Below, piece by piece: positions 2,149-60,636 of a DNA stretch of 64,000 nt. The DNA is from Dendrobates tinctorius (lineage: Eukaryota), in contig NW_027361684.1 in the NCBI RefSeq assembly GCF_039654945.1, positions 87,420,001 to 87,484,000 of the forward strand, read 5' to 3'. Under the pieces are notes generated by a model. It made no database searches. It saw nothing but the letters and a program-made list of their open reading frames with translations, and was not told the DNA's origin. How positions within the stretch are numbered: position 1 is the stretch's first letter; each line of letters begins with the position of its first letter. A program made the position numbers and the translations under genes.

Positions 2149-2651
2149 AATGAGAATTGTGGTATACATGATGTGTATAGGGCCAAAAAAAAGCCACAAT
2201 GGATCACATGGCGGATAGAATACGCCAATACACATATACATAAAGGACAATTGATAAAGACAACTGCAATCACAATGCAAATGTACAAAAACGAAAGGCC
2301 AGCAGTCAAAATGTCTTAAAATTATAATATTTTATTAGTAATTAAGTAATATAGTAAGACATAGGTACATGGAAAAGGGGGAGGGGGACAAAAACCCGCA
2401 AATGGCTGAAAAAAGGCCTAGCATGGCATCCCCATCTCCCAGGAATACAATCCCATGTGGTCGTACCACAAGACAACAATTATAGTAGTCATATAATTCA
2501 GTAATTGTAATATATATCTGCGTATCAAGCCGAGATTCAGAGAGCTTACTATAAATAGAGGTATCTAGAAACGATATTCATAATATCTAGACCTACAAGG
2601 GATCTGTAGTATTACCTGGACAGAGTGGGGTTAAACCATGCAGCGGCCGGA

Positions 2652-2694
2652 CCCCGACGCGCGTTTCGGAGCGTGCTGCTCCTTCCTCAGGGGG
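2652..2694 (-). ncRNA. Minimal type I hammerhead ribozyme, intact (left pLTR)
   Basis: Minus strand CCCC-CUGAGGA-A-GGAGC(agcac)GCUCC-GAAA-CGCGCG-UC^GGGG; palindromic stem III ACGCGCGU. Confidence 0.9.
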
Positions 2695-3800
2695 CGTGAC
2701 CGGCAGCGTCAGCGTATGACGTTTATATCATGCCAGAACAAAGACTATTGGATGCGCCGCCTAACTGACATGACCGAGGCAGCGCCCCCTCCCGGCGAAC
2801 CGGAAACACGCGGGCCCCACGTGATCCGGGACGTCAGAGAGAGGGAGCAGCCATCGGGCCGACCAGTAGGCAACTGCGCATGACAGGAAGTGCAAAATCC
2901 GCCATTTTGGAAAAGGGATTATAGAAGGAAATAAGAACGGGAAAACTAAACGAACATATGATAAAGCATAATTATAAAACAAAAATCAAAAGACACATGT
3001 ATAGAAATGTTCATAATCAAAACTCAGATTAGTCCCCATAACGTGGAGGGAAAGACACTTAACATCTAGGTCGGTGTGTGACAATGAGAAGGACCATGTA
3101 GCAACCTCATGAAACACTATATAATAGTGCCAGTAAGACAATTTAGACGTAATAGTGCCCAAAATGTGTACCAAATATAGTGTACCTGAATAATTATTTA
3201 ATAATATATATGTGTATAATAGATCGACATAGATCAAAAGGGCACCATAAGGTTAAAAAATTAATATATGTGGGAACCCTACTGAAGGATATATAGAGAA
3301 AATAGGGGCATACCACAATAAACTCACATATGGCACAATATTGTCCCAAGCGAGCATGTCCACACTGGCACATATATAGTACAACACGCACGCCGCCACA
3401 TGCACATACATGGGATATACACATCTGGACATAATAGATGTCCCAAAAGGGACCCAACTGAAAAAAGCAATAGTTATATGAACACAAATATAATCACGAC
3501 AAATTGACCAAAAAATATAACATAAAAGATTCCAATATAAATGTCCATGTGGCGAACTGCGTCAGCCACCAGGATGAACAAGTGTCTTCACACGAAAGAA
3601 TCTTCATTAGTTCTACTCCATCCATTTTAACATCTTGCTATTGAAGACTTCCTCCAAAAATAGCATAGTGGACAATCCAATAGTGAATGAAATATGTCTA
3701 AATATTAAAGAAAAAAAAAAAAAAGGTTAAAACCAATAAAATAGAAAAATAGGAAAGCTAAAAAGCCACAGTGATAAATCAAATGTTCAGCAAGCGGGAA

Positions 3801-4849
3801 CTATAGAAATGGGGCGAAGGATATGTTCGCATTCAGACCGTTTGGTTGCATAGTGCCCAGTCTCCATATCCACCGGGTTTCAAGTTGAGCTAGGCGGCCA
3901 GATAATTTACCACCCCTTATGTTTATTTTAAGAGAATCAATACCCCTAACTCTAAGTGATGCAGAGATACACTGATGAAACTCCTTAAAATGTCTAGGCA
4001 ATGTTTTTAGAAGGGAGTCATCGGTGCAAGACAGAGCAGCCTGTATACCTAGTACATGTTCCCTTGTACGGACTTTCAGCTGCCTTGTGGTCATGCCCAC
4101 ATAAATTAGTCCACAAGGACACGTAGCATGGTATATCACGTATCGAGAGGTGCATGATATCCGACACTTGATCTTAAATGTTTTTGTACCATCATGGTTA
4201 ACAAACGAATTACACTGTTCAATGTTTGGACAAGCCACACACCTCCCACATGGCGAACAACCATGCCCAGTTGAAAACGCATCCAAGAAGGTGGGCATCG
4301 GACGATGGACATAGTGACTAGTCACAAGTTTATCTCGTAAATTGCTAGCCCGCCTAAATGTAATGGAGGGAAACTTGGGAATGATTTTAGCTAAGATAGG
4401 ATCAGCCTGTAAAATCGGCCACGCCTTCCTCAATGCCGTGCGGACCATCCCATGAGACGGATGAAACGAGGTAATAAACCTCACAGTGTTCTCATTTTTG
4501 CGTGTCTTAACTGATGTATTCCTGTAGAGAAGGTCATTTCGAGTCGAGTATCTCGCGCGTTGGTAGGCTTTCTTGACACAGCGTTTACTGTATCCGCGTG
4601 ACAAGAAACGTGCTTGTAACTCTTTAGCTCTCGTATGGAAGTCACTATCTGAAGAGCAAATTCGACGTAACCGCAAGAACTGCCCCACAGGAATGGCCTT
4701 AATGAGATGATCCGGATGGCAAGAGGAGGCGTGGAGGAGAGAGTTAGTGGCTGTATCCTTGCGGTAAATATCTGTTTGAATGACCCCATCCACATCTCTC
4801 CTGATAGAGACATCAAGAAAGTTAATTTTAGATGGATCCCATGTCAAGG
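3801..4849 (-). pseudogene. Inverted duplicate of the RT thumb + GIY-YIG region
   Basis: ORF 3801..4877 matches the C-terminal part of 4832..6487 except three residues (I/N, A/E, A/T). Confidence 0.95.
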
Positions 4850-6487
4850 CCATCCAGGTGTCCACCCGGCAGACCAATAGTATCGGGGAGGGGAAACTTT
4901 CTCGAAAATGTTAACAAATGGATCGACCATCTTCTTCAGCCGCTGGTTACTAGTTTACCCTCTTTCCTCAAAGACACGGGTGATCTCTTACGTAAGGTCG
5001 ACGGACTATGTTTGGAGAGTGATACTCTTCTGGCTTCAGTGGATGTTGAGTCTCTATATACAAGCATTAGACACCTGGATGGCCTGCGGGCAGTCCAATT
5101 CTTTCTCAGTACATCCACGATCCCGTTGGGTCTCAGAGACCTCATCCTGGAGCTATTAGAGTTCACTCTCACGCACAACTTTTTTGTGTTCAAGGGGTCG
5201 TTTTACCTGCAGCTCCAGGGGACTGCCATGGGGGCGGCCTTTGCGCCATCCTATGCCAACCTCTTCCTGGGGCTGTGGGAGAGGGACCTCTTCTTGTCTG
5301 ATGGACAGGGGTCGATTGACCGTGTTCCATTTTGGGCACGCTATATCAACGACATCTTGTTTCTCTGGCAGGGTAGTTCCGTCGACCTTATGGAATTCGT
5401 GTCTGTTCTGAACCTCAATAATTTTAACATCAAACTTACCTTGACATGGGATCCATCTAAAATTAACTTTCTTGATGTCTCTATCAGGAGAGATGTGGAT
5501 GGGGTCATTCAAACAGATATTTACCGCAAGGATACAGCCACTAACTCTCTCCTCCACGCCTCCTCTTGCCATCCGGATCATCTCATTAAGGCCATTCCTG
5601 TGGGGCAGTTCTTGCGGTTACGTCGAATTTGCTCTTCAGATAGTGACTTCCATACGAGAGCTAAAGAGTTACAAGCACGTTTCTTGTCACGCGGATACAG
5701 TAAACGCTGTGTCAAGAAAGCCTACCAACGCGCGAGATACTCGACTCGAAATGACCTTCTCTACAGGAATACATCAGTTAAGACACGCAAAAATGAGAAC
5801 ACTGTGAGGTTTATTACCTCGTTTCATCCGTCTCATGGGATGGTCCGCACGGCATTGAGGAAGGCGTGGCCGATTTTACAGGCTGATCCTATCTTAGCTA
5901 AAATCATTCCCAAGTTTCCCTCCATTACATTTAGGCGGGCTAGCAATTTACGAGATAAACTTGTGACTAGTCACTATGTCCATCGTCCGATGCCCACCTT
6001 CTTGGATGCGTTTTCAACTGGGCATGGTTGTTCGCCATGTGGGAGGTGTGTGGCTTGTCCAAACATTGAACAGTGTAATTCGTTTGTTAACCATGATGGT
6101 ACAAAAACATTTAAGATCAAGTGTCGGATATCATGCACCTCTCGATACGTGATATACCATGCTACGTGTCCTTGTGGACTAATTTATGTGGGCATGACCA
6201 CAAGGCAGCTGAAAGTCCGTACAAGGGAACATGTACTAGGTATACAGGCTGCTCTGTCTTGCACCGATGACTCCCTTCTAAAAACATTGCCTAGACATTT
6301 TAAGGAGTTTCATCAGTGTAACTCTGCATCACTTAGAGTTAGGGGTATTGATTCTCTTAAAATAAACATAAGGGGTGGTAAATTATCTGGCCGCCTAGCT
6401 CAACTTGAAACCCGGTGGATATGGAGACTGGGCACTATGCAACCAAACGGTCTGAATGAGAACATATCCTTCACCCCATTTCTATAG
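4850..6487 (+). pseudogene. 5'-truncated Penelope-like RT + Cys-rich linker + GIY-YIG endonuclease; catalytic YIDD mutated to YIND
   Basis: PPGRPIVSG, DVESLYTSI, QGTAMGAAFAPSYANLF, RYINDI, NFLDV, YRKDT, CSPCGRCVAC linker, VIYHATCPCGLIYVGMTTR...REH, E..W...PNGLN. Confidence 0.95.
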
Positions 6488-7379
6488 TTCCCGCTTGCTG
6501 AACATTTGATTTATCACTGTGGCTTTTTAGCTTTCCTATTTTTCTATTTTATTGGTTTTAACCTTTTTTTTTTTTTTTTCTTTAATATTTAGACATATTT
6601 CATTCACTATTGGATTGTCCACTATGCTATTTTTGGAGGAAGTCTTCAATAGCAAGATGTTAAAATGGATGGAGTAGAACTAATGAAGATTCTTTCGTGT
6701 GAAGACACTTGTTCATCCTGGTGGCTGACGCAGTTCGCCACATGGACATTTATATTGGAATCTTTTATGTTATATTTTTTGGTCAATTTGTCGTGATTAT
6801 ATTTGTGTTCATATAACTATTGCTTTTTTCAGTTGGGTCCCTTTTGGGACATCTATTATGTCCAGATGTGTATATCCCATGTATGTGCATGTGGCGGCGT
6901 GCGTGTTGTACTATATATGTGCCAGTGTGGACATGCTCGCTTGGGACAATATTGTGCCATATGTGAGTTTATTGTGGTATGCCCCTATTTTCTCTATATA
7001 TCCTTCAGTAGGGTTCCCACATATATTAATTTTTTAACCTTATGGTGCCCTTTTGATCTATGTCGATCTATTATACACATATATATTATTAAATAATTAT
7101 TCAGGTACACTATATTTGGTACACATTTTGGGCACTATTACGTCTAAATTGTCTTACTGGCACTATTATATAGTGTTTCATGAGGTTGCTACATGGTCCT
7201 TCTCATTGTCACACACCGACCTAGATGTTAAGTGTCTTTCCCTCCACGTTATGGGGACTAATCTGAGTTTTGATTATGAACATTTCTATACATGTGTCTT
7301 TTGATTTTTGTTTTATAATTATGCTTTATCATATGTTCGTTTAGTTTTCCCGTTCTTATTTCCTTCTATAATCCCTTTT

Positions 7380-7595
7380 CCAAAATGGCGGATTTTGCAC
7401 TTCCTGTCATGCGCAGTTGCCTACTGGTCGGCCCGATGGCTGCTCCCTCTCTCTGACGTCCCGGATCACGTGGGGCCCGCGTGTTTCCGGTTCGCCGGGA
7501 GGGGGCGCTGCCTCGGTCATGTCAGTTAGGCGGCGCATCCAATAGTCTTTGTTCTGGCATGATATAAACGTCATACGCTGACGCTGCCGGTCACG
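7380..7595 (+). promoter_or_regulatory. Putative pLTR Pol II promoter (mirror copy at ~2695-2910, minus)
   Basis: CpG-rich block with AAAATGGCGG (YY1-like), ACTTCCTG (ETS), TGACGTC, CACGTG, CCAAT and TATAAA (7563-7568) about 30 nt upstream of the HHR. Confidence 0.6.
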
Positions 7596-7638
7596 CCCCC
7601 TGAGGAAGGAGCAGCACGCTCCGAAACGCGCGTCAGGG
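7596..7638 (+). ncRNA. Minimal type I hammerhead ribozyme (right pLTR), mismatch at first stem I pair
   Basis: CCCC-CTGAGGA-A-GGAGC(agcac)GCTCC-GAAA-CGCGCG-TC^AGGG; G>A at 7635 relative to the left copy. Confidence 0.88.
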
Positions 7639-8014
7639 TCCGGCCGCTGCATGGTTTAACCCCACTCTGTCCAGGTAATACTACAGATCCCTTGTAGGTC
7701 TAGATATTATGAATATCGTTTCTAGATACCTCTATTTATAGTAAGCTCTCTGAATCTCGGCTTGATACGCAGATATATATTACAATTACTGAATTATATG
7801 ACTACTATAATTGTTGTCTTGTGGTACGACCACATGGGATTGTATTCCTGGGAGATGGGGATGCCATGCTAGGCCTTTTTTCAGCCATTTGCGGGTTTTT
7901 GTCCCCCTCCCCCTTTTCCATGTACCTATGTCTTACTATATTACTTAATTACTAATAAAATATTATAATTTTAAGACATTTTGACTGCTGGCCTTTCGTT
8001 TTTGTACATTTGCA

Positions 8015-8562
8015 CTGTGGTAGTAGTAGTACAAATATTTCTATGGTTGCTTTTTCAAGTGTTTCAGTGAAGACGCTTTCTGGTACCCCTTTTATTCTGA
8101 TATTTTTCCCACGACTCCGGTTTTCCTGATCTTCCAGGGCAAGAAAGGTATTATTCAGCTGGGTTCTGTTGTAGTCCAAATGATCTTTTGTGATATTAGA
8201 GTGGTTTATAAGTGAGGATTGAACAGACTCCAAGGACTCCACTCTATTGCCGATTAGCTGTATGTCTGCCCTCATACCAGATATTTCAGTAATCAAAGGC
8301 TTCATTGCTTGCGCCAAAGATTTTTTAAGAAAGGACTTTGAGATCCTGCTCGATTCTGGTTGTTTAGATCACTGCCCGAAGCATCATCACTCCACTCCGA
8401 ATCCTCCATACGCTCCTCAGTTGTAATATGCAGTCGAGGATTTTTCAGTGTGGCCCGGGTAGATGAGGTTTTATTTTTTAAGAATTTATCCATCTCATTT
8501 TGTTTGACTTGATGTATTGCTGAAGCCAGAATTTTTTCTCGCTCTTTATGAGATTTAACCAT
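8015..8562 (-). pseudogene. L1 ORF1 N-terminal half (frameshifted)
   Basis: MVKSHKE... then a coiled-coil region and LEDQENRSRGKNIRIKGVPE. Confidence 0.85.
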
Positions 8563-8711
8563 TATTTCTGTGTATAGCGCTCTTTCTATGGGTCACCGTA
8601 TGTGCATGGGGGTGGTGTTTAGATCCACATTATAAAGACAGTGGTAATCACCCTGCTTCTAGAGGCCTAGTAACAAGAAAAGAGACTTAATAGCCTAGGC
8701 CTAGTAACAAG

Positions 8712-9035: not shown

Positions 9036-9750
9036 AAAATCAAAGGAGACAACCTCTGTTATATGTATGCTGGAATAAGGAGCTCCAAGAATCAAGGCTC
9101 CTGTGTTTCTGTTATCCAGTGAGCTGGGGAGTGGTGGGTGAAGAGCAAACAAGCGACACCAGGAAGGCTAGCAAGATCCAGCTAACCAACAGTTAATTTT
9201 AAGCGCTTCTTCCAGGGACTCCTGTAGTAGATAATATGGTGCCTTCTGCACTCTGTGGGGGCCCTGGACAGTGGGGAGGGAAAAAGCAGGGTTCCGTTGT
9301 TTTCTCGTTTCCGAGTGCTCCCCTTACAGCAAACTGACGTCCACAATGGCGCACAGGGCCCAGTCTCTCTGCCCTGCACCCGGATGCAGCCCACTGGTCT
9401 CAGGACAAGCGCCCCCCCCCCGCAAGCAGCACCGTGAGGCTCTCCAGCGCCAGGCGAGACCGCCGCGTCGGGTGAGTATCGCTCTCTTTGTATCAGCGGG
9501 CAGTCTGCGTGTCTTCGTCTCAGCGTGCCAGGGCAGGCTGCCCATGCTGCAAGATGGCGCGCTGTCAGGGCCCAGTGTCTCCCTCGGCACTAGTTCCGTC
9601 GCTGGCTGCCCCCAGACTCCCCTCCTGCGTATCTGTACCTTGTCTCTGCGATTTTAGATGCCCACTGGAATCAAAATATAACGTCCAGATATAAAAGAAA
9701 TGTCTCTTTAGTAGCCTGGGAGCGGGAGCTGAGCCAATATGCGTCCTCCC

Positions 9751-12251: not shown

Positions 12252-12253
12252 TA

Positions 12254-13884
12254 CAGTTAGGTCCATATATATTTGGACAGAGACAACATTTTTCTAATTT
12301 TGGTTCTAGACATTACCACAATGAATTTTAAACAAAACAATTCAGATGCAGTTGAAGTTCAGACTTTCAGCTTTCATTTGAGGGTATCCACATTAAAATT
12401 GGATGAAGGGTTTAGGAGGTTCAGCTCCTTAACATGTGCCACGCTGTTTTTAAAGGGACCAAAAGTAATTGGACAATTGACTCCAAGGCTATTTCATGGA
12501 CAGGTGAATCCCTTGTTTATGTCATTCTCAATTAAGCAGATAAAAGGCCTGGAGTTGATTGGAGGTGCGGTGCTTGCATTTGGAAGGTTTTGCTGTGAAG
12601 GAAACAATCGGTCAAAGGAGCTCTCCATGCAGGTGAAACAAGCCATCCTTAAGCTGCAAGAACAGAAAAAACCCTTCCGAGAAATTGCTACAACATTAGT
12701 AGTGGCAAAATCTACATTTTGGTACATCCTGAGAAAGAAAGCAAGCACTGGTGAACTCATCAATGCAAAAAGACCTTGGTGCCCACGGAAGACAACAGTG
12801 GTGGATGATCGCAGAATAATCTCCATGGTGAAGAGAAACCCCTTCACAACAGCCAACCAGGTGAACAACACTCTCCAGGAGGTAGGCGTATCAATATCCA
12901 AATCATCATAAAGAGAAGACTGCATGAATGTAAATACAGAGGGTTCACTGCACGGTGCAAGCCACTCATAAGCATTAAGAATAAAAAGGCTAGACTGGAC
13001 TTTGCTAAAAAACATCTAAAAAAGCCATCACAGTTCTGGAAGAACATTCTTTGGACAGATGAAACCAAGATCAACCTCTACCAGAATGATGGAAAGAGAA
13101 AAGTATGGCGAAGGCGTGGTACAGCTCATGATCCAAAGCATACCACATCATCTGTAAAACGGTGTGATGGCTTGGGCATGCATGGCTGCCAGTGGCACTG
13201 GGTCACTAGTGTTTATTGATGATGTGACACAGGACAGAAGCAGCCGAATGAATTCTGAGGTATTCAGAGCCATACTGTGTGCTCAGATGCAGCCAAACGC
13301 AGCTAAACTGATTGGTCGTCGTTTCATACTACAGATGGACAATGACCCAAAACATAAAGCCAAAGCAACCCAGGAATTTATTAAAGCAAAGAAGTGGAAT
13401 AGTCTTGAATGGCCAAGTCAGTCACCTGATCTCAACCCAATTGAGCATGCATTTCACTTGTTAAAGACTAAACTTCAGACAGAAAGGCCCACAAACAAAC
13501 AGCAACTGAAAACCACCACAGTGAAGGCCTGGCAGAGCATCAAAAAGGAGGAAACACAGCATCTGGTAATGTCCATGAGTTCAAGACTTCAGGCAGTCAT
13601 TGCCATCAAAGGGTTTTCAACCAAGTACTAGAAATGAATATTTTATTTACAATTATTTAATCTGTCCAATTACTTTTGGTCCCTTTAAAAGCAGGGTGGC
13701 ACATGTTAAGGAGCTGAAACTCCTAAACCCTTCATACAATTTTAATGTGGATACCCTCAAATGAAAGCTGAAAGTCTGAACTTCAACTGCATCTGCATTG
13801 TTTTGTTTAAAATTCATTGTGGTAATGTCTAGAACCAAAATTAGAAAAATGTTGTCTCTGTCCAAATATATATGGACATAACTG
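12254..13884 (+). mobile_element. Full-length Tc1 (IR/DR type) transposon with frameshifted transposase
   Basis: TA TSDs (12252-53, 13885-86); ~225-bp TIRs starting cagttaggtccatatatatttggacag; WTDET, MDNDPKH, SPDLNPIE. Confidence 0.95.
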
Positions 13885-14136
13885 TATAAGGATGAAAATT
13901 GTGTTTCACGGTGTTTTATCCATTTATGTGTTAGTTTTCAACATTTTTTGGGCCAAATGTTTTGCATCTTTTGCATTGGGTAGTCTTGTTTTTGCGTGTT
14001 TTTAGGTCAAAACATGACAAAAACAAGGCCAAATTTATCACCAGATGTCTGGAAGCTTATTATTCTGATAGTGAAGTCAGACAAAAACCAAAAATAGGTA
14101 GCTATGGAACTCAACTGTTCTCAAAGTCAAGTATCA

Positions 14137-35375: not shown

Positions 35376-35859
35376 CAGGCCGTTTGGATGTGGTATACTT
35401 AAGTAAATTCTTTCCCTGCTGACCCTTGGCTGCATTTACTTCAGCGCAGATACAGGCATAGCTTTCTCCAGCTGTGTTTGCACCTGCTGCTGGCACTGTG
35501 GATTAAGAAGTTAGTTGGGTCACTTGATGGGGCAGGAAGCAAGCGCTGGTCTCAGGCATTCCTTTGGGTTGTTCTCAAACTTCACAGGCTTTGTGTCAAA
35601 TGTTGTAATAGGCAGCAGTAGGACTTAAAATAAAAATCAATTATGGCCTATAACAAATGTCATTAAAAATTGTATATCTAGTAAATCACAAGAAATCCAT
35701 GGTGGCCAGGTTTTCAGGAAATTCTCCACAGTATCTGTGACTACGGCTTGGAACATTTTGTAAAGCGTTGTGTAAGAGACTTTGGACCCTTAGGATCAAT
35801 TTACTAAGCTAAGTGGATCCATTATAAAGTATCAGTAGCCCTCTCTTCCACATGAGGTA

Positions 35860-36663
35860 AAAAAATTTAAAAGAGACACTAGCACCAGACGTAGTATTAT
35901 ATATAATATATTTATAATTTATTTCCTATATAGTAGTGACACATCCAAGAATTTATTTATAAAAACTACCACCAGTGTCTAGTGAAATGGTGATTAAACA
36001 CCTGATATAAATAATAAATCAACCAACCATAGGACTAATCAACCAAAAAATTTTTACCAGACAGGATATACGTAATAGATAGCATTTATTATATTGGTGA
36101 TTTCATATAAAATCAATTTAAAAACAATGTGCACGTTTTGGGACCATTTTCACAAAATTTGTAAAATAATCACAGTGGACCCATTTATATGTACCATAAT
36201 ATGCAATCATCATATATATCTAATAAGTAAAAAAAATTTTATATATAAAAAAAATAAGCAAATAGTGCATGTGCATAAATAAATCCCGTGCAAAAATGTA
36301 ACAATGATAATTTCATTATTTCACTGCCACATAAAGTGCAGTGTGCAAAATGCCAATCATGTGCAAAAAACCACAAAATTGATTAAATCCTGTGCCAAAA
36401 TATAAAAATGATAATTTCATTAATTCACTGCCATATAAAGTGCAGTGTGCATAATAACAATCATGTGCTGACATGTCATGTGCAACCACCACAATGATTA
36501 AGTGTATTAAAAAAGACAATATAGAGGAATGCAATAATTAAGTCCTGTACCTTTAAGGGTCACCACGTCCCTTTAATGCGCACCCCGACGCACGTTTCGG
36601 AAGATTTTCCTTCATCAGGAAGGAAAATTGGTTGATTAGTCCTATGGTTGGTTGATTTATTAT
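35860..36663 (-). mobile_element. Short non-coding Penelope-like pLTR insertion with an HHR and a ~38-bp 5' inversion
   Basis: 14-bp TSD ttccacatgaggta (35846-59, 36664-77); 36626-36663 is the reverse complement of ~36010-36047. Confidence 0.8.
36583..36622 (-). ncRNA. Minimal type I hammerhead ribozyme
   Basis: CUUC-CUGAUGA-A-GGAA(aauc)UUCC-GAAA-CGUGCG-UC^GGGG, followed by AUUAAA. Confidence 0.82.
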
Positions 36664-42330: not shown

Positions 42331-42794
42331 TATATGGCACTATAGAGGCAATACTCTTCCTTTAGTTGAACTATGCACATCACGTGCAGCGCTTTCAGTA
42401 TGTAAGTTGGCACTTTTCCCACAATGCAAAAATATACATTCTTTTCCTAGAAGTGTCCTGTAAGTACTGAGTGATCTGTTGTGCTAATTATGCAGCATGG
42501 AACTTTGTAGATGTGAATTATATGTATAAATCTCAGTAAATGAAATAGCCAGCGGGGAGTTCTACAGAGAATGAATTCCATTTTATAGGATTGGAGCATA
42601 ATTAAACATTTGCAACATTCTGTTACTTTGTGCTTTTACTGGCAGCTTTCTATAAGTGTTTAGTATAATGTACATGGGTTATTATGTATTTAAACTATCA
42701 TTCGCACAAATGACAAATGCCCCATAATGTTCTAACAATTAAAACTACAACATACGAGGAATACAATAAAAAAATATATTGCAGCACTGTGTTA

Positions 42795-42984
42795 AATAGA
42801 AAAAACAGATAGCAGCACAAACTTGAGAAGATTTTGGGTGCAATACTTCCTGAGTAATGCGGTTTTCCAACGCAAAATATAAATGGAAAAATATCAGACA
42901 GCACTCCAGTTCAAGGAAAAATTGTGGACTTTAATCCAGCGCCAAGTGGTGCAACGTTTCGACCTCACAGCATGGTCTTTGTCA
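42795..42984 (-). mobile_element. ~190-bp HHR-headed Penelope-like mini-insertion
   Basis: 12-bp TSD agcactgtgtta (42783-94, 42985-96); HHR, ATTAAA, then a T-rich tail. Confidence 0.8.
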
Positions 42985-42989
42985 AGCAC
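42949..42989 (-). ncRNA. Ultra-minimal type I hammerhead ribozyme, U3-A8 core variant
   Basis: GUGC-UUGACAA-A-GACC(augcuguga)GGUC-GAAA-CG-UU^GCAC; loopless palindromic stem III. Confidence 0.85.
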
Positions 42990-43049
42990 TGTGTTAGCTA
43001 GAAATATCTATGAAAATACTTTTATGCCCTAAAAAGACAAAATTATGTA

Positions 43050-43397: not shown

Positions 43398-43695
43398 TTA
43401 TTTTTCAAGAGCCTTTTGATAAACAACATTTTTGGTTTTTCCTTTCGGTGCAAAGATGAACAGATTTTTGGCAGTTCCAACTCTTGAACAGGCCACGTAA
43501 AGTTGACTATGAGAAAAGCATGGAGATTGCAAATCGATCCCTACTACTTTCAAGGACTGTCCCTGAGCCTTGTTAATGGACATTGCAAATGCCAGTCGAA
43601 GTGGAAACAGGAGGCGTTTAAAATCAAAAGGCAAATCAGATGGAATGAGTGAAATTCTTGGAATGAAAATGTCTTCTCCTTTGGCACATCCTGTT
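43398..43695 (-). pseudogene. Helitron PIF1-family helicase C-terminus
   Basis: IFIPRISLIPSDLPFDFKRLLFPLRLAFAMSINKAQGQSL...FSHSQLYVACSRV. Confidence 0.92.
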
Positions 43696-44732
43696 GCTGA
43701 ACTGTGTATCTAATCCTATCCTATGTAATACCATCTGCTGAGCTGTGTATCTAATTCTGTCCTGTGGGATATTGTCTTCTGAGCTGTGTACCTAATCCTA
43801 TTCTGTGTGATACTGTCTCCTGAGCTGTGTATCTAATCCTATCCTGTGTATTACTGACTGCTGAGCTGTGTATCTAATCCTTTCCTGTGTGATACTGTCT
43901 GCTGAGCTGTGTATCTAATCCTATCCTGTGTGATATCCTGTATCCTGTGTGATACAGTCTGCTGAGCTGGGTATCTAATCCTATCCTGTGTGATACAGTC
44001 TGCTGAACCTTGTATCTAATCCTATCCTGAGTGTTATTGTCTGCTGAGCTGTGTATCTAATCCTTTCCTGTGTTATACTGACTGCTGAGCTGTGTATCTA
44101 ATCCTATCCTGTGGGATGCTGTCTTCTGAGCCATGTATCTAAGCCTATCCTGTGTGATACAGTCTGCTGAGCCATGTATCGTATCCTATCCTGTGCAATG
44201 CAGTCTGCTGAGCCGTGTATCTAATCCTATCCTAAGTGATACAGTCTGCTGAGCAATGTATCTAATCCACTCCTGTGTGATACAGTCTGCTGAGCCGTGT
44301 ATCTAATCCTATCCTGTGTGTTACTGTCTGCTGAGCTATGTATCTAATCCTATCCTGTGTGTTACTGTTTGCTGAGCTATGTATCTAATCCTATCCTGTG
44401 TGTTACTGTCTGCTGAGCTGTGTTTCTAATCCTATCCTGTGTGATACTGACTGCTGAACCGTATATCTTATCCTATCCTGTGTGATACAGTCTGCTGAGC
44501 CATGTATCTAATCATATCCTGAGTGATACAGTCTGCTGAGCCGTGTATCTAATCCTATCCTGTGTGATACAGTCTGCTGAGCTGTGTATCTAATCTTCGC
44601 TTGTGTGATACAGTCTACTGAGTTGTGTATCTAATCCTATCCTGTCAATTCTTATGGAACTAATTTTTGGACTTCCATGCACTGCTTGACAAAATACAGG
44701 ATTCCAATTATAGTAGAAGATTAATCATTTAT

Positions 44733-44775
44733 TCCCAACGCGTTTCGAAGTAAGAATTACTTCTTCCTCAGGGGA
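44733..44775 (-). ncRNA. Minimal type I hammerhead ribozyme
   Basis: UCCC-CUGAGGA-A-GAAGUAA(uuc)UUACUUC-GAAA-CGCG-UU^GGGA. Confidence 0.88.
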
Positions 44776-44777
44776 TA

Positions 44778-44818
44778 CCCCTGAGGAAGAAGTAGTTCTT
44801 ACTTCGAAACGCGTTGGG
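44778..44818 (+). ncRNA. Minimal type I hammerhead ribozyme
   Basis: CCC-CTGAGGA-A-GAAGTA(gttct)TACTTC-GAAA-CGCG-TT^GGG. Confidence 0.88.
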
Positions 44819-45493
44819 AATAAATGATTAATCTTCTACTATAATTGTAATCCTGTATTTTGTCAAGCAGCGCATGGAAGTCCAAAAATTAGTTACATAA
44901 GAATCGATATATTAGCGGTCACTTGTCTGGCCATTGGACGTGCAGCAGCTGACTACCAATTGTATATGCCTGATCTCTCCTATAATAGGTGAGTGGATTT
45001 CTTTTATAATTTTAACATTAACCCGGATAAGACACTATTGCGCTTTTTCCTGTTCCTATAGTGTACTATAATCCTATCCTGTGTGATACTGTCTGCTGAG
45101 TCGTGTATCTAATCCTATCCTGTGTGATACTGGGCTCCCCCTGCAGTCTGTGTCAGAGGGTGGTCTGTGTCGGAAAGGTAATAAATTGTGTTATTTCCAG
45201 CTTTACAGAAGGAGAAAACACCATAGAAATGATAAGAATAATTGGCCTAAGTTACCACAACTGTCTACAAGGAAAACTGTTGCTCATAGCAACCAATCAC
45301 AGCTCAACTTTCATCTTTTAAATAGCTCTGGTGAAATGAAAGATGCTTAGTGATTGGTTGATATATGGAGTGGGCGTGGCCGACACACACACACATATAC
45401 ATACACTAATTTTTATATATATAGACTAGCTGAAGAGCCCGGCTCTGCCCGGGCATAGTAACTAACTACGGTTAGTTATAACAAATTATAATG

Positions 45494-54664: not shown

Positions 54665-54704
54665 ATTCTATAAAGATACCATAGCAGCCAAGCTCCCATT
54701 GTAG

Positions 54705-54872: not shown

Positions 54873-54984
54873 GTGAGCTTCCAGCACATCACTTCAGGTG
54901 GATCGTCATGTGTGTGTTTTAAAATGCTCCTTGGGGCTCCGCCATGTACTCATGTGTCCGTGGGAAAAGTCCGCTTTGCATGCT

Positions 54985-55510
54985 TCGTACACACTTGACT
55001 CCGCTCCGTACATCCCGTACACATATGGCTCCACTCCGTACACACACGGCTCCGCTCCATATACCCCATACACACAGTACACACACTGCTCCACTCCGTA
55101 CACCTCGTACACGCGTGGTTCCGCTCCGTACACCTCGTACATGGGCGGCTCCGCTCCGTACACCTCGTACACGGGCGGCTCCGCTCCGTACACCTCATAC
55201 ACGTGGCTTCGCTCCGTACACCTCGTACACGCGCGGCTCCGCTCCGTACACCTCGTACACGCGCGGCTCCGCTCCGTACACCTCGTACACGCGCGGCTCC
55301 ACTCTGTACACCTCGTACACGCGCGGCTCCTCTCCGTACACCTCATACTCGCGTGGCTCCGCTCCGTACACCTCGTACTCGCGCGGCTCTGCTCCGTACA
55401 CCTCGTACTCGCGCGGCTCCGCTCCGTACACCTCGTACTTGCGCGGCTCCGCTCCGTACACCTCGTACTCGCGCGGCTCCGCTCCGTACACCTCGTACTC
55501 GCGCGGCTCC
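54985..55510. repeat. 30-bp CpG-rich minisatellite (second block at 56187-56355)
   Basis: Unit cgtacacctcgtacacgcgcggctccgctc. Confidence 0.95.
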
Positions 55511-57273
55511 TGAGCTGCCCCTTGCCTCTATTAGTGGAGGCCATCTGCATCCTGCTATATGTGCATTTGTCATCACACAAGGTTCTGGTAAGGCCATATC
55601 TTGTGTGAGTGTTTTTGAATTTTTTCTATGTTAGCTGTTTTGATATTAGTGTTAGGGACCTGCAATATCATGAGGAGCCTTGACGTTGGCTTGCAGGCTA
55701 TATCTATTTTGGCCAAAATATTAACCAATACCTCATTTAATGTACTCATTGTATGCATTAATTTTTTTGCACTTACATCATTTTTTGCAGGATGCAGTCT
55801 GGCCTCTTTTTTTGGCTTGGTCTATTTGGGCGTCTGTCACTGTGTGTTGCATATTTTAGTGCTGTAGCAGCCCGCCTGCTAATACTATGGGCGTCATTAA
55901 TAGGTTGCAAGCCAGACACTTTGCATCACACTTATATATGTGTGACTGACGTCCTATGCAAGCCTTATCTATGTGCATTTTTCCTACTAGGCAGCCAACC
56001 CCTTCATGGTTTGTAAGGTGTGGGGTGGCTGATTTTATCAGTAGTTTGCACCTGAGCTGCCCCTTACCTCTATTAGTGGAGGACAGCTGCATCCTGCTAT
56101 ATGTGCATTTGTCATCAGACAAGGTTCTGGTAAGGCCATATCTTGTTGTGAGTTTTTTGAATTTTTTCTATGTTAGCTGTTCTGTTCGTACACCTCATAC
56201 ACACACGGCTCCGCTCCATACACCTCGTACACACACGGCTCCGCTCCGTACACCTCGTACACACACGGCTCCGCTCCGTACACCTCGTACACACACGGCT
56301 CCGCTCCGTACACCTCGTACACACATGGCTCCACTCCGTACACCTCATACACACCCAGGTCTGCTACATCTACCCTGTAAACCCCTCCTGACCCCACACA
56401 TACTTACCTCATCCAGCACCATGACAACAGCACAGCAGAGTCTTGCAGACACCAAGAGGCAAGGCTGAGCGCACAGGACCTGTGATGAGGTCACAGGAGG
56501 GGCAGAGTCAGGGGTCACATGATCAGGGGTCTGGACAAAGGCTCCTGATCATGTGACCCCTGACTCCTCCCCTCCTGTGACCTCATCACAGGTCCTGTGA
56601 ACAGAGAAGAGAGCAGGCATGCGATGCTGTGAGTGGCTGTGGGGGGAGGTCTCATGCTATGGTGAGGATGGGGTGCGTGGGGGGGGGCGTGGCGGCTTAT
56701 CTCCCTGCAGTGCGGGAGGGTTTGAAACTAACCGCCGTGCCCGCAGTGGGCCGGTGGCAGGAGCAACAGCCATGCCAGTGGCTGCATCAGCTGGCAAGCG
56801 GCCAGATGAGCAGGCGCTGCCGCCCGTGGCCCACATGACAGCGGCCCAGTGGGAAAATGCCCGGTTGGTTATATTACCAATCCGGGCCTGAATAGAAAGT
56901 TATACCATGAGAGGAAAAAGAGCCAATGGTGTCTTAGAAAAAGTAATACATTTTTATTTATTAAAAAGATTTTTCATAGTATGCAAATATATAGTTAATA
57001 CACAGATACCAGTTAGAGTGCAGAGAAGGAGACTACCCCCAAGTGCCACAGTACCTCTCAAATAGATTGAAAACCTGGCGCATGATTGCTACCAGAAAAG
57101 TAAGCCAGAGAAAGCAAAAATAGTGTTAAGTAAAGAGGAGATTCCAATAGGAATAGCGCTGAGCGCACCAAGCGTTCAGTAATGTCAAGTGAGGCAGGCG
57201 CTCAGTGAACCATAAAGCAAACTGTTAGGCTTACCAGAGAGGGACTGCGGACACCGGGAGGAGGGTGTGAGGC

Positions 57274-57321
57274 TCCCCGATGCGCGTTTCGCGGCCACGC
57301 AGAGCCGCTTTCTCAAGGGGA
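57274..57321 (-). ncRNA. Minimal type I hammerhead ribozyme, U3-A8 core variant
   Basis: UCCCC-UUGAGAA-A-GCGGC(ucugcgug)GCCGC-GAAA-CGCGCA-UC^GGGGA; the stem III G>A is probably CpG decay. Confidence 0.85.
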
Positions 57322-58085
57322 AGTAAAGAAGGGTCCAAACAGGACCTTCAAATAACCCCGTGAACTTGGTCACATGGTTGTATGTGACCAATGGCGGTGA
57401 ACTGAGCGGCGCATGCACGGTGTGCCAAGGGCGCCCTGCATGCATCAAAGGCGTCACGTGCACAGCATCCACCACAGGGATTAACCCCATGTGTGGCGCA
57501 AGCAACGTAGAGACGTCCCGATGCAGACAGAGCCCCGAGGAAACATCGCCATGTGCACCGTCACCGTCATGTAATGGGGACATATAATAAAAAGTTATGT
57601 ATAAAGGAAAGGAAGAGAGAAAAAAGGGAGGGAGGAAAAGATATATATATATATATATATAAGCTCATATTAAATGCAGCATTAAACACATAAGAATCAG
57701 TGATACATTATGAATAGCAGCAATGCATATATAATGCAAATTACATCATGCAGAGCAATCACAAAATTCAGAGCTAATACAAATGTAGCAATAATTCCAC
57801 AAGAAGAAAATCACAAATGAATTGTCTATGTCCTCCGTACAACAGAATCCGAAGTCCTTTCTTTATGAGTAGTTGGTTCAAGGTCCCACCAGGGCTAGAT
57901 GAATGGAAGTGAAGAAGCATCAACAAATTCACTGGTAATAGAAAAAATAATGAAATAAGAACAAGTTAAAAACCATATAAGCTAAAAACGCACACACTCA
58001 TCCTCCAAAATAGGGGTAGAGTGGTGTAGGTAGGACAAGCAGGAGGAATGTAAAAGACGCCTCAAAAATGGATGAAATATGCTTT

Positions 58086-59823
58086 TTATAAGAATGTAGC
58101 AAAGCTTAGGGATTCATTCAGTCCTTTAGGTGCAACTGTGTCAAGAAGCACAATCCACCTAGCTTCAATTTGGGCGAGAAGTTTTTTGTCATCTTCGCCC
58201 CTGATCCCAAGGTGGAGAGCCTCAATCCCCCTAACACTCAGTAATTTAGCTTCACAATTGTGATAAGCCCTAAAGTGCCGAGGGATCACCTTCAGTTCTC
58301 CAACATCAGTCACTGTTCTGGCTGCGCCAATGTCCCGCACATGCTCCCGGACCGTAACCCGGAGCTCTCTGGTAGTGAGACCAACGTAAATCCTGGGACA
58401 CGGACAGGTAGCATAATATATAACATTGGTAGTCCCACAGGAGATATGCTGTCTGATGGAAAAATCTCTGGAGCCATCCTCCGAGGAGAACGTGGAGCAG
58501 CGCAAGACATTGGCACAAGCCAGACAATGACCGCATGGAAAAGAGCCGACCTGTGGGGTATGCATTCCCAGAAAATTATTAGGAGCCGGAATATAATGGC
58601 TTTTTACTAGGAGATCCCCACGATTTTTAGATCTCCTAGATGTCATACTGGGAAAAGTGCCTAAAGCAGACCCGAGAGTTGGATCAGATTCCAGGATGGG
58701 CAAGTGCTTTTTAAGGATAGTACGCATACTCTCCCACTCATGGTTAAAGGTGGAAATAAACCTTATAGGGCCTTCAGTGTCCACCCTGATACCTCTTTTT
58801 TTGGAGTTCAAAAGGTAGTTACGAGAGGTTTTTCTTGCTCGGTCGAACCCAGTTTTCACACACTTGCGGCTGTAGCCGCGTGCGTGAAATCGATCTTTGA
58901 GGTCCGAGGCCTGTGCCTCAAATCTGATGTCTGTAGAGCAGATTCGTCTCATCCTTAGGAACTGTCCGACCGGGACAGCCCTGATGGTGGCCGGATCATG
59001 TGCTGAGGATGCATGAAGCAACGAATTGACTGATGTTGGTTTTCTGAAGACATCCGTCTGGGTACGCCGGTCGGTGGCGACCTCCAGACGAACGTCCAGA
59101 AAATCAATCGTAGATTCATTGAAAGTATATATAAGTCGTATATTAAAATTATTTTCATTAAGCATCCTCATGAAGTCCTCAAGTCCGTGTAACCCCCCAT
59201 CCCACAACAACAATATGTCATCAATATAGCGATACCAGCACAGAACATGGGAAGCGGCCTGCGGGCCCCCGTTGCCAAAAACGAATCTCTCCCAGGCCCA
59301 CAGGAAGAGATTAGCGTACGAGGGCGCACAGGCCACGCCCATGGCTGTGCCGCGCTTCTGTAAGTAAAAACGTCCTTGAAGACAAAGAAGTTGTGGGTGA
59401 GGATGTAACGCACCAGCTCCATGATCAGCTCACACAGAGGGCTGTCCAGGCTGGAGGCCCCCAAGAAGAGACGAACCACTTCCAGACCCTGGGAATGATC
59501 GATGCAAGTATATAAGCTCTCGACATCAGATGTAACCAAAAGGACATGGGGTCCACAAGGACGCCGTCGACCCGTGACAGGACGTCCGTCGTGTCACGGA
59601 TATAGGAAGGTAGAGTCTCTACCAAGGGTTTGCGATAATAGTCAATAAATTGACATGTAATATCACAAATACCTCCTATACCTGACACGATAGGACGCCC
59701 TGGTGGGTCAAGGGCGTCCTTGTGGATTTTTGGTAGTAAGTAAAATGTTGGGGCTCTGGGGGACCTGACCATAAGGCCATCAAAGACCTTCTTAGTAATT
59801 ATGTTATTATTCACAGCCTTCAT
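58086..59823 (-). pseudogene. Penelope-like RT + GIY-YIG with two frameshifts
   Basis: FYLLPKIHK..PPGRPIVSG / DVESLYTCI / MGVACAPSYANLF, RYIDDI, CGHCLAC, VIYYATCPCPRIYVGLTTR..REH, PKGLN. Confidence 0.95.
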
Positions 59824-60636
59824 CAGAATAGAAAGTTACAATATTATTATATTTGAAGCCTAAAAAATATTTATTTAGTTGGGCAAACATATTTCCTTAC
59901 TACAGTGGTCTCAAATCAGCTGGGTAAATGGGCCACACATAGTAAAAATTTGAATTTGACAGGCCACATAAGATGATGCTTTCAGTGATACCATTTTTGT
60001 TGTATATTACTTTTTGATCATTTTGTACCACTTTTGCCTTTTTTATGTTGTTTATCACATGAGTCATGGTACAAGTTTTCTTTTTTACTTCAGTTTCTAC
60101 ATAAACATCATTTTTTGTGGCAAAACATTCTTATTCTGAATTTCCTTTTAATTTATATTTAGGGAAGAGCGAACTCAACAAAGTGTCAGTTACCGAATCG
60201 TGAACACAAACTTTTTACTGTATGTCTGGTTTCCTGTTCGGGTTTGCCAGTCTAATAAAGCATGTTGAAAGGCTGCAACTCAGTCAATCAAAATGCTTTT
60301 AGACTGTGGGCACTTCCGTAGCCATCACAGCAGTGACTAGTATTGGCATGGCTGTGGTTGGCTGGCGCAGCCCATGACCTGGCCTGTTTAATGGATCACG
60401 AGTGCCGCCACCATTGTGCTCTCACTAGTGTAGGGATAGAACACAGCTGGAGTGAGGGACAGATTGAGACTGTGCACTCTGCATAAAAAATGCTGTGTTT
60501 ATTCTGCACCCCCTAACCATGGTAGTATTGTAATTTAAGCCGCTGTGTTTACTCTGCCAACCCATATGTGAGACCTGTGCTAAAATCCACTATGTGTGCT
60601 CTGCACCTCCTTGGCTGTGGTAGCACTGTCCTTTAA

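What the first reader, a model, noticed from the sequence alone, without database searches (positions are those of the whole stretch)
2149..59826. A community of Neptune-type Penelope elements and tiny hammerhead-ribozyme insertions
Seen: seven complete type I HHR motifs (2652, 7596, 36583, 42949, 44733, 44778, 57274) and one half motif (~43100). Their stem sequences differ but the architecture is shared: 3-5 bp stem I, an extra A before stem II, and a tiny palindromic stem III. Three lie in pLTRs of RT/GIY-YIG elements; the rest lie in 190-800 bp non-coding insertions with TSDs. Established: Penelope-like elements carry minimal HHRs that cleave as dimers through a palindromic helix III, and non-autonomous HHR retroelements (retrozymes) exist. 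Inference: about six families were mobile here, and the short inserts are either pLTR-only products or an unannotated non-autonomous HHR class moved by Neptune RT.
Basis: partly seen in the sequence, partly recalled or inferred. Interest (0 to 1): 0.85.

Follow-up and report, generated by a model that had tools for sequence, protein, structure and literature searches.

The report
Penelope retroelements with minimal hammerhead ribozymes
This frog-genome window holds two Penelope-like jumping genes and three short non-coding copies made by the same machinery, each carrying a tiny hammerhead ribozyme motif; this is real but already well described in amphibians.

Summary
All seven hammerhead (HHR) motifs are at the stated places. 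A strict descriptor finds 6 where about 0.2 are expected by chance. A covariance model gives E values from 1e-14 to 6e-5, and stems I and II and the 3-8 core pair covary. The "half motif" near 43100 is not supported.

There are five insertions, all with 12-14 bp target-site duplications (TSDs):
- Two are 5'-truncated RT/GIY-YIG Penelope-like elements (PLEs) with a Neptune-type zinc-finger linker. One is a head-to-head pair.
- Three are non-coding inserts of 805, 190 and 423 bp that begin at the 5' edge of an intact HHR.

Seven coding frog PLE families have a TATA-like box about 35 nt upstream of the HHR. I therefore read the short inserts as retrocopies of short, uncleaved promoter-to-3'-end transcripts, moved by PLE proteins. 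One short unit shares a 25-nt 3' motif with a coding element and belongs to a high-copy dispersed family.

Little of this is new. Published already are minimal HHRs in pseudo-LTRs (pLTRs), the U3-A8 core, opposed pairs, thousands of solitary motifs in Xenopus, and pLTR-derived non-autonomous "non-LTR retrozymes" (2014, 2020, 2026). This scan has also flagged the same kind on other DNA of this genome. The TATA-to-HHR spacing may be a small addition.

The parts
2149..8014 (.). Element A: head-to-head pair of 5'-truncated PLE copies. The minus copy is 4849 to 2149 and the plus copy is 4850 to 8014. The TSD CTGTGGTAGTAGTA lies at 2135-2148 and 8015-8028. The minus copy's 3' end runs about 127 nt further than the plus copy's.
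   Evidence: Inverted repeat arms 2260-4849 / 5439-8030, about 100% complementary. TSD and ends. tblastn to frog PLE proteins on both arms.
4832..6487 (+). 551-aa ORF: the C-terminal part of the RT, a CX2CxxC linker and a GIY-YIG endonuclease. The mirror 358-aa ORF lies at 3801-4877(-).
   Evidence: Translation. 617 homologues, best 67% identity to Ranitomeya imitator; relatives carry PF00078, PF01541, PF26215 and PF28514. The local Pfam copy gave no hit.
2651..2695 (-). Min-HHR of family A: CUGAGGA core, 5-bp stem II, 8-nt palindromic helix III ACGCGCGU, H17 = C, stem I CCCC/GGGG. It starts 547 nt before that copy's 3' end.
   Evidence: E = 1.3e-14. The predicted dimer has an intermolecular 8-bp helix III, -44.3 kcal/mol against -36.4 for two monomers.
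7596..7640 (+). Min-HHR of family A on the plus arm, with a C.A mismatch at pair 1.1-2.1. It starts 419 nt before the 3' end. A TATA-like ATATAAA lies at 7562-7568, 35 to 29 nt upstream of stem I.
   Evidence: (E = 5e-14).
7973..8014 (+). 3'-terminal motif of element A (TAAGACA...TTG...CTTTCGTTTTT), then the 3' junction.
56903..59825 (-). Element B: a single 5'-truncated PLE copy with at least two frameshifts. The intact ORF piece is 58086-59342. The TSD GAATAGAAAGTTA lies at 56890-56902 and 59826-59838.
57273..57322 (-). Min-HHR of family B: core UUGAGAA (U3-A8), 5-6 bp stem II, helix III ACGCGCAU with two positions that break the palindrome. It starts 420 nt before the 3' end. An A/T run lies 35 to 30 nt upstream.
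   Evidence: (E = 2e-11).
56903..56940 (-). 3'-terminal motif of element B (TAAGACACCATTGGCTCTTTTTCCT), beginning 33 nt before the junction.
35859..36663 (-). Short insert a (805 bp, non-coding). The 13-bp TSD ACCTCATGTGGAA (as read on the minus strand) lies at 35846-35858 and 36664-36676. Its first 36 nt (36663 to 36628) are an inverted copy of internal 36012-36047. The direct copy then starts no more than 5 nt before stem I.
36583..36622 (-). Min-HHR of insert a: CUGAUGA core, stem II GGAA/UUCC, helix III ACGUGCGU (self-pairs with two G.U), weak stem I.
   Evidence: E = 6e-5; not used to build the model.
42795..42984 (-). Short insert b (190 bp, non-coding). The 12-bp direct repeat TAACACAGTGCT (as read on the minus strand) lies at 42783-42794 and 42985-42996. 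The upstream copy supplies the stem I 5' strand and U3, so part of it is probably 5'-junction microhomology.
42949..42989 (-). Min-HHR of insert b: core UUGACAA (U3-A8), stem II GACC/GGUC, helix III ACGU, stem I GUGC/GCAC.
   Evidence: Not found by model R1.
44646..45068 (.). Short insert c (423 bp) inside a 41-bp satellite. The 14-bp TSD TAATCCTATCCTGT lies at 44632-44645 and 45069-45082. It consists of a 291-nt unit at 44778-45068(+) plus an inverted copy of that unit's first ~130 nt at 44646-44774(-). The two meet head to head at the HHR 5' edges.
   Evidence: (I8: 130-nt arms, 96% complementary). High-copy dispersed family in the source organism.
44778..44818 (+). Min-HHR of unit c: CUGAGGA core, 6-7 bp stem II, helix III ACGCGU, H17 = U. 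Its mirror copy is at 44733-44775(-).
   Evidence: E = 3.7e-5 and 2e-6; not used to build the model.
45027..45051 (+). 3' motif of unit c (TAAGACACTATTGCGCTTTTTCCT), 22 of 25 positions identical to element B's, about 40 nt before the junction.
   Evidence: z = 5.9. Contig-depth peak at 45014-45049.

Best explanation
The window records five retrotranspositions by Penelope-like element (PLE) machinery of the Neptune type in an anuran genome.

In these elements a TATA-like box sits about 35 nt upstream of a minimal type I hammerhead. Transcripts are therefore predicted to start at the hammerhead's 5' edge. They run through a few hundred non-coding bases to a 3' motif near which the PLE reverse transcriptase starts copying.

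Shown:
- The PLE proteins leave 12-14 bp target duplications.
- Because both target strands can prime, they often build head-to-head inverted copies.
- The templates of the short inserts were uncleaved, because the whole hammerhead is kept.

Inferred:
- Long templates gave the two 5'-truncated coding copies (A and B).
- Short transcripts running from the hammerhead to the 3' end gave the three non-coding inserts. These carry no upstream promoter and are probably dead on arrival.
- The hammerheads have a helix III that cannot close as a hairpin but is self-complementary. If they cut at all, they do so as dimers, and cleavage would remove only a roughly 40-nt capped leader.
For: HHR reality:
- The motifs exceed chance and are found by the model.
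- Covariation: 96.4% of cells paired against 34-46% in slid controls, 7 of 13 pairs with compensatory changes, and the 3-8 pair as CG:9, UA:2, UG:1.
- The same motif lies at the same place, 419-505 nt before the 3' end, in coding PLEs of Ranitomeya imitator and Dendrobates tinctorius and in both coding copies here. Further HHR-like motifs (E 2.7e-5 to 0.4) lie 3' of the ORF in PLE loci L006 (R. imitator), L004 (Ascaphus) and L005 (Rana); their distance to the 3' end was not measured.

PLE identity: plus the CX2CxxC linker defined in PMC8557442.

One machinery:
- TSDs of 14, 13, 13, 12 and 14 bp.
- Inverted partial copies in A, a and c, matching both-strand cleavage and extension and internal initiation by a purified PLE protein (PMC11167929).
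- A shared 3' motif in B and c, and more weakly in A, at the same distance from the junction.

Start at the hammerhead:
- Four cDNA 5' ends (a, b, and both arms of c) lie 0-5 nt before stem I.
- 36-37 contigs per DNA run of family c lose similarity at that point, with mixed continuations.
- An A/T-only run starts at -35 to -37 in 6 of 7 coding families and at -48 in the seventh. It ends at -26 to -32 in all seven. Joint chance is about 1e-5, but the window was chosen after seeing the data.

Uncleaved templates also fit the finding that HHR mutants do not affect insertion in vitro (PMC11167929).
Against: - No RNA evidence. The start site is only predicted, and the one run guessed to be RNA may contain DNA.
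- Other copies of family c appear to share about 5-9 more bases upstream of the hammerhead (loose-end consensus, agreement only 0.5-0.6). The true 5' end may therefore be a few bases further out.
- Drosophila virilis Penelope uses a TATA-less internal promoter (PMC2377424), so a TATA-driven start is not a general PLE rule.
- Several related-locus hammerheads have non-canonical cores (U4 changed in L006, L004 and L003), so activity is doubtful there.
- The high copy number of family c is hard to reconcile with promoter-less dead-on-arrival copies unless a few source loci are very active.
- No coding parent was identified for any short unit.
Confidence: 0.72

Rival explanations
1. The short units are a self-propagating non-autonomous lineage (non-LTR retrozymes or SINE-like partners of Neptune PLEs). 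They would have their own ORF-less source loci, possibly tandem arrays giving self-cleaved circular RNAs that the PLE reverse transcriptase copies.
For: - Unit lengths of 190, 291 and 764 nt differ from the 419-505 nt tails measured in four coding families (A, B, L001, L002).
- Beyond the HHR they share nothing with the coding tails, apart from a 25-nt 3' motif between unit c and element B, as SINE-LINE partners do.
- Family c is high-copy and dispersed.
- Amphibian retrozyme consensus lengths average 316 bp, dispersed monomers occur, and retrozymes group with pLTRs in trees (bioRxiv 10.64898/2026.07.22.740005).
- Another window of this genome was noted to hold ORF-less tandem pLTRs (unchecked).
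Against: - All three inserts here are monomers.
- No go-back joint from the unit's 3' end to its hammerhead appeared among the listed contig joints. 39 joints were not shown.
- The units lack the TATA-like box, and their 3' ends would not supply one at the right distance in a tandem.
- The retained intact hammerhead at the 5' end means the template was not a ribozyme-cut monomer.
Confidence: 0.3
2. The short inserts are ordinary random 5' truncations of full-length coding PLEs. Their ends at the hammerhead are coincidence or reverse-transcriptase stalling.
For: - Most PLE insertions are 5'-truncated, and solitary min-HHRs were attributed to truncated PLEs (PMC4209133; preprint discussion).
- Both coding copies in the window are truncated.
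Against: - Four of seven cDNA 5' ends fall within about 5 nt of the hammerhead's 5' edge. Even if truncation points were uniform over only the last 1 kb, this has a probability near 6e-6 (my calculation).
- A polymerase stalling on structure should stop at the 3' side of the hammerhead, not after copying all of it.
Confidence: 0.08
3. The palindromic structures (2149-8014 and 44646-44907) are assembly fold-back artefacts, and some of the 'hammerheads' are chance matches.
For: - Near-perfect 2.6-kb inverted arms are a known trouble spot for assemblers (PMC8557442).
- Rfam models give no hit.
Against: - Both palindromes are bounded by clean 14-bp TSDs.
- Both are asymmetric: a 589-nt unique centre and a 127-nt longer end in A, and arms of 129 against 291 nt in c.
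- The arms of c have diverged 4-5%.
- Related PLE loci in two other frog assemblies show the same head-to-head layout.
- Chance is excluded.
Confidence: 0.04

Closest known systems
Minimal hammerhead ribozymes of Penelope-like elements (Cervera & de la Pena 2014, PMC4209133; Lunse, Weinberg & Breaker 2016/2017 as cited in PMC6765202)
   Same: [quoted passage not shown] All are seen here.
   Different: Nothing essential. This is a different frog genome with different sequence families. The opposed pair in insert c is only 3 nt apart. The TATA-like box about 35 nt upstream is not mentioned in that paper.
Neptune-clade EN+ PLEs with pLTRs, inverted 5'-truncated partners and 'tails' (Arkhipova 2006 as cited in Craig et al. 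2021, PMC8557442; Frangieh et al. 2024, PMC11167929)
   Same: RT plus C-terminal GIY-YIG, the CX2-5CxxC linker, head-to-head inverted copies, alternative 3' ends consistent with internal initiation on both target strands, and use of uncleaved RNA as template.
   Different: The window has no direct pLTR pair because all copies are 5'-truncated. The extra 3' extension in element A is about 127 nt rather than the 30-40 bp 'tail'. The hammerhead lies about 420-500 nt from the 3' junction, against roughly 100 nt in the Anolis Poseidon element.
Metazoan non-LTR retrozymes (Cervera & de la Pena 2020, PMC7229834; Li, Clavereau & Pollet 2026, bioRxiv 10.64898/2026.07.22.740005)
   Same: Short non-coding AT-rich units with a type I hammerhead that needs dimerisation in amphibians. 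TSDs are longer than 4 bp. They are proposed to be non-autonomous pLTR derivatives moved by PLEs. Dispersed monomers exist.
   Different: Retrozymes are defined by tandem units with at least two hammerheads and by circular RNAs. The three inserts here are single units that begin at an intact hammerhead, and no tandem joint was seen.
Schistosoma Sm-alpha / Sj-alpha SINE-like elements (as summarised in PMC6765202)
   Same: A short dispersed retroposon with a promoter-proximal hammerhead near its 5' end.
   Different: Those carry their own promoter followed by a canonical hammerhead. The frog units appear to lack a promoter and carry the minimal variant.
Drosophila virilis Penelope regulatory region (Schostak et al. 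2008, PMC2377424)
   Same: The hammerhead lies close to the transcript's 5' end, inside the pLTR.
   Different: Penelope has a TATA-less internal promoter, with the start site 46 nt upstream of a 75-nt intron whose 3' end abuts helix I. The frog elements show a TATA-like box and no intervening intron.

Membership tests
Hammerhead ribozyme, type I, minimal PLE variant | Conserved core CUGANGA ... GAAA, or the covarying U3-A8 form | tested here: met
   Five motifs have CUGA[G/U]GA and two have UUGANAA. All have GAAA.
Hammerhead ribozyme, type I, minimal PLE variant | Three helices with open helix I, non-G at position 17, G10.1-C11.1 | tested here: met
   Descriptor hits. Pair counts: helix II 100% paired with 4 of 5 pairs compensatory, G10.1-C11.1 invariant in 12 distinct sequences.
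Hammerhead ribozyme, type I, minimal PLE variant | [quoted passage not shown] | tested here: met
   An A in all seven. Helix III fully self-pairing in six of seven (G.U pairs counted); the motif at 57273-57322 self-pairs at only 6 of 8 positions. Features as listed in PMC4209133.
Hammerhead ribozyme, type I, minimal PLE variant | Match to curated Rfam hammerhead models | tested here: not met
   No hammerhead family at gathering score or at E up to 10. This is expected for a variant whose helix III cannot close as a hairpin.
Hammerhead ribozyme, type I, minimal PLE variant | Self-cleavage at the predicted site | not testable with these tools
   Needs in vitro transcription of monomer and dimer constructs.
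Penelope-like elements, EN+ (Neptune clade) | Single ORF with a telomerase-like RT followed by a C-terminal GIY-YIG endonuclease | tested here: met
   ORFs read directly. Full-length frog homologues down to E = 1e-240, and relatives carry PF00078 and PF01541. tblastn maps both elements. The local Pfam scan was blank.
Penelope-like elements, EN+ (Neptune clade) | Additional CX2-5CxxC zinc-finger-like linker between RT and EN (Neptune and Nematis, not Penelope/Poseidon) | tested here: met
   C-SP-C-GR-C in ORF A and C-GH-C-LA-C in ORF B, just upstream of the GIY-YIG block. Criterion from PMC8557442.
Penelope-like elements, EN+ (Neptune clade) | Phylogenetic placement with named Neptune references | not tested
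Penelope-like elements, EN+ (Neptune clade) | pLTR (partial tandem) and/or an inverted 5'-truncated partner | tested here: met
   Inverted partner in element A. There is no direct pLTR in the window, but relatives L001 and L002 have both.
Non-LTR retrozymes | Tandem repeat with at least two consecutive units, each with a complete hammerhead | tested here: not met
   Inserts a, b and c are single units. No go-back joint from 45068 to 44778 among the listed contig joints. Criterion from the 2026 preprint.
Non-LTR retrozymes | Expression as linear and circular RNAs of about 170-400 nt | not testable with these tools
   Only contigs of a run guessed to be RNA touch unit c.
Non-LTR retrozymes | Non-coding unit related to a PLE pLTR | tested here: inconclusive
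   No coding capacity. Only the hammerhead and a 25-nt 3' motif (B against c) are shared with coding tails.

The most novel reading that the evidence does not exclude
In vertebrate Neptune-type PLEs the hammerhead may be the first structure of the transcript, placed directly at a TATA-driven start site. It may act less as a cutter than as a 5'-terminal dimerisation module. Its palindromic helix III would pair two template RNAs held by a dimeric RT/EN that primes on both target strands. The two cDNAs would then meet exactly at the hammerhead edges, as in insert c and at the inverted piece of insert a.
Probability: 0.1. Interest if true: 0.6.

Novelty: new member of a known kind. Interest (0 to 1): 0.22.

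Why it matters
As a catalogue entry it matters little. It adds five families from one more frog genome to a phenomenon already documented in amphibians.

Two details could help the open question of what PLE hammerheads are for:
- The short retrocopies keep a complete hammerhead at their very 5' end. This is genomic evidence that uncleaved RNA is the template in vivo, in line with in vitro work on an Anolis element.
- A TATA-like box sits at a fixed distance upstream of the hammerhead in seven divergent frog families. This predicts that cleavage would strip only a capped ~40-nt leader, which is directly testable by 5'-end mapping.

Tried and rejected
- Rfam at gathering score and at E up to 10 gave no hammerhead hit, only hairpin-driven microRNA look-alikes at the palindromes 44721-44831 and 56474-56597.
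- Pfam on the two PLE ORFs was blank even at E = 10. The PDB sequence search was blank.
- MAFFT misaligned the nine motifs, so the model was built from five well-aligned rows with a hand-written structure.
- BLAST of the short inserts against coding tails in the window and in six frog loci showed nothing beyond the hammerhead.
- I looked for a splice acceptor directly upstream of helix I, as in D. virilis. It is not consistently present.
- I considered a Pol III B-box-like reading of stem II plus GAAAC. I rejected it because there is no room for an A box upstream.
- I considered a circular-RNA or tandem template for the exact unit length. There is no tandem joint in the listed contigs, and the loose-end consensus upstream of the hammerhead does not match the unit's 3' end.
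- A fuzzy-regex motif scan timed out and was replaced by seeded alignment.
- The motif at 20911(-) found by the first loose regex lacks helices I and III and was dropped. So was the 'half motif' near 43100.
- A look-up of our own findings by sequence was blank, which means nothing.
- The Lunse et al. paper is not held and is cited only through a review.

Full report
**What is in the sequence.** The window has no N runs. Rfam finds no hammerhead (HHR) at its curated thresholds or at E up to 10. It reports only microRNA-like scores on two palindromes.
- 2651-2695(-) and 7596-7640(+)
- 36583-36622(-)
- 42949-42989(-)
- 44733-44775(-) and 44778-44818(+)
- 57273-57322(-)

Each has a 3-6 bp helix I, the core, one extra A, a helix II that opens with G-C, then GAAA. 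Helix III is only a 4-8 nt self-complementary stretch, and position 17 is a C or U. Two motifs carry UUGANAA, that is U3-A8 in place of C3-G8. The 'half motif' near 43100 is only a hairpin followed by GAAA, and I do not count it.

**Is it more than chance?**
- An explicit descriptor gives 6 hits in the window. It misses the 7596 copy because of one stem I mismatch. First-order Markov resamplings of the window give 0.16 hits, or 0.29 when any Watson-Crick 3-8 pair is allowed.
- A covariance model built from five sequences finds the three families it was not trained on, at E = 2e-6, 3.7e-5 and 6e-5. It misses 42949.
- Fifteen matches from the window and from related frog loci were aligned. 96.4% of pair cells are standard pairs, against 34-46% when partners are slid.
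- In that alignment 7 of 13 pairs show compensatory changes, and no shuffle out of 500 reaches the observed covariation. The 3-8 pair occurs as C-G nine times, U-A twice and U-G once. The alignment was fitted to the model, which favours the structure somewhat.
- Cofolding predicts the textbook double hammerhead for family A, with an 8-bp intermolecular helix III.

**The coding elements.** The ORFs at 4832-6487(+), 3801-4877(-) and 58086-59342(-) show the RT C-terminal motifs, a CX2CxxC linker and a GIY-YIG block with the inserted Cys pair. They have hundreds of full-length relatives in frogs. The closest is 67% identical, from Ranitomeya imitator, so the source is an anuran. Relatives carry RVT_1, GIY-YIG, HTH_animal and DUF8422. 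The linker is the feature that separates Neptune and Nematis from Penelope/Poseidon (PMC8557442). I did not test the phylogenetic placement.

Element A (2149-8014) is a head-to-head pair of differently 5'-truncated copies. The arms are almost identical, the centre has 589 unique nt, the TSD is 14 bp, and one 3' end is about 127 nt longer than the other. Element B (56903-59825, minus strand) is a single 5'-truncated, frameshifted copy with a 13-bp TSD. The window has no direct pLTR pair. In A and B the hammerhead starts 419-420 nt before the 3' junction, or 547 nt in A's longer arm.

**Relatives elsewhere.**
- I fetched six PLE loci from other frog assemblies.
- The R. imitator and Dendrobates tinctorius loci (L001, L002) show the classical layout. 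This is an inverted 5'-truncated copy, a direct pLTR, a full unit of about 4.9 kb, and a hammerhead in each pLTR about 500 nt before the 3' end.
- The D. tinctorius pair has the U3-A8 core in two 100% identical pLTRs.
- Another R. imitator locus (L006) and loci from Ascaphus, Rana and Hyla have hammerhead-like motifs 3' of the ORF. Several have non-canonical cores.

**The short inserts.**
- All three are non-coding and are bounded by TSDs of 13, 12 and 14 bp, the same range as A and B.
- Insert c interrupts a 41-bp satellite. It is a 291-nt unit plus an inverted copy of that unit's first ~130 nt. The two meet head to head at the hammerhead edges.
- Insert a starts with a 36-nt inverted copy of an internal piece, followed directly by the hammerhead. 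The internal site resembles the target sequence, as expected if the second target strand primed there.
- Insert b starts at the hammerhead. Its stem I 5' strand and U3 lie inside the repeated target sequence, probably through junction microhomology.
- A purified PLE protein cleaves and extends both target strands and initiates internally (PMC11167929). That explains these architectures.
- The short units share nothing with the coding tails beyond the hammerhead, with one exception. A 25-nt motif lies 33-42 nt before the 3' junction and is 22/25 identical between coding element B and unit c. It is partly present in A (z = 5.9).

**Public sequencing runs.**
- Contigs of public runs from the same organism were laid on 44600-45120.
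- Unit c belongs to a high-copy, diverged, dispersed family.
- 36-37 contigs per DNA run lose similarity at the hammerhead's 5' edge, with heterogeneous continuations.
- Depth peaks over the shared 3' motif.
- No joint from the unit's 3' end back to its hammerhead is among the listed joints.

**Why the inserts start at the hammerhead.** Four of the seven cDNA 5' ends in the window lie 0-5 nt before helix I, which random truncation cannot explain. In all seven coding families examined (A, B and five related loci) an A/T-only, TATA-like run sits upstream of the first helix I base. It starts at -35 to -37 (once at -48) and ends at -26 to -32. The joint chance is about 1e-5, but the window was chosen after seeing the data. 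This predicts a start site 4-6 nt before the hammerhead. I therefore read the short inserts as complete cDNA copies of short transcripts that run from this start to the 3' initiation site. The templates were uncleaved. Because the box lies upstream of the start, the copies lack a promoter.

I did not find this juxtaposition in the open papers searched. Drosophila virilis Penelope uses a TATA-less internal promoter, with an intron ending at helix I (PMC2377424; PMC4209133).

**Comparison with what is known.**
- Cervera and de la Pena (2014, PMC4209133) already reported most of this. Their paper covers the minimal motif in PLE flanking repeats, the extra nucleotide, the palindromic helix III and the U3-A8 covariation. 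It also reports opposed pairs 100-700 bp apart, mostly solitary motifs 'probably related to truncated PLEs', and about 9,000 motifs in Xenopus tropicalis.
- Dimer cleavage is summarised in PMC6765202.
- Non-autonomous type I hammerhead retroelements in animals, including amphibians, were described in 2020 (PMC7229834).
- A 2026 preprint argues that they derive from PLE pLTRs. It reports amphibian unit lengths averaging 316 bp and dispersed monomers.
- By that preprint's own definition (tandem units with at least two hammerheads), the three inserts here are not retrozymes. At most they are monomer derivatives.

**Earlier notes of this scan.** Notes on other windows of the same genome report the same kind of element. 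They include ORF-less tandem pLTRs and a TATA-like box beside a hammerhead. I used them as leads only.

**Verdict.** What remains open is whether the short families have coding parents, whether transcripts really start at the hammerhead, and whether any of these motifs cleave.

Noticed in passing
window 7562-7568 (and 29-35 nt upstream of 57322 on the minus strand); L001, L002, L004, L005, L006 upstream of their hammerheads: A TATA-like A/T run lies at a fixed distance upstream of the first helix I base in seven divergent frog PLE families. It starts at -35 to -37 in six and at -48 in the seventh. It predicts a transcription start at the hammerhead's 5' edge, which is where the three short inserts begin.
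   Followed up: partly
window 7973-8014(+), 56903-56940(-), 45027-45068(+): A shared 3'-terminal motif (TAAGACA...TTG...CTTTTTCC) lies 33-42 nt before the 3' junction in coding elements A and B and in short unit c. It is a candidate reverse-transcriptase recognition or initiation signal.
   Followed up: partly
window 2149-2275 versus 8014: The two arms of element A end at different points, about 127 nt apart. This is much longer than the 30-40 bp 'tail' described for PLEs and suggests two initiation sites on the template.
   Followed up: no
L006:3806-3848 and 9503-9545; L004:3139-3179 and 8607-8647; L003:8740-8779: Hammerhead-like motifs in apparently intact PLEs of R. imitator, Ascaphus truei and Hyla sarda have position U4 of the core changed (CAGACGA, CAGUAGA, CGGAAGA), while the helices and GAAA are kept. 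They may be inactive relics or a tolerated variant.
   Followed up: no
window 671-1477(-) and flanks of 2135-2148 / 8015-8028: Element A is inserted into a LINE-like element. A 268-aa ORF upstream carries an Exo_endo_phos endonuclease domain.
   Followed up: no
window 12252-13886: A Tc1/mariner-type DNA transposon remnant, with 224-nt terminal inverted repeats (97% complementary) and ORF pieces matching HTH_Tnp_Tc3_2 and DDE_3.
   Followed up: no
window 43594-44645 and 45069-45132; 14238-15252; 54940-56440: Three satellite arrays with periods of 41, 55 and 30 bp. The 41-bp array is extremely abundant in the source organism's sequencing runs.
   Followed up: no
window 56472-56599: A GC-rich 61-nt-arm perfect-type hairpin scores against several unrelated microRNA models, all below their thresholds. 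It is probably a foldback or MITE-like repeat rather than a microRNA gene.
   Followed up: no
window 24161-27466: A direct duplication of about 2.4 kb at 95-98% identity, in the most GC-rich part of the window. Its nature was not examined.
   Followed up: no
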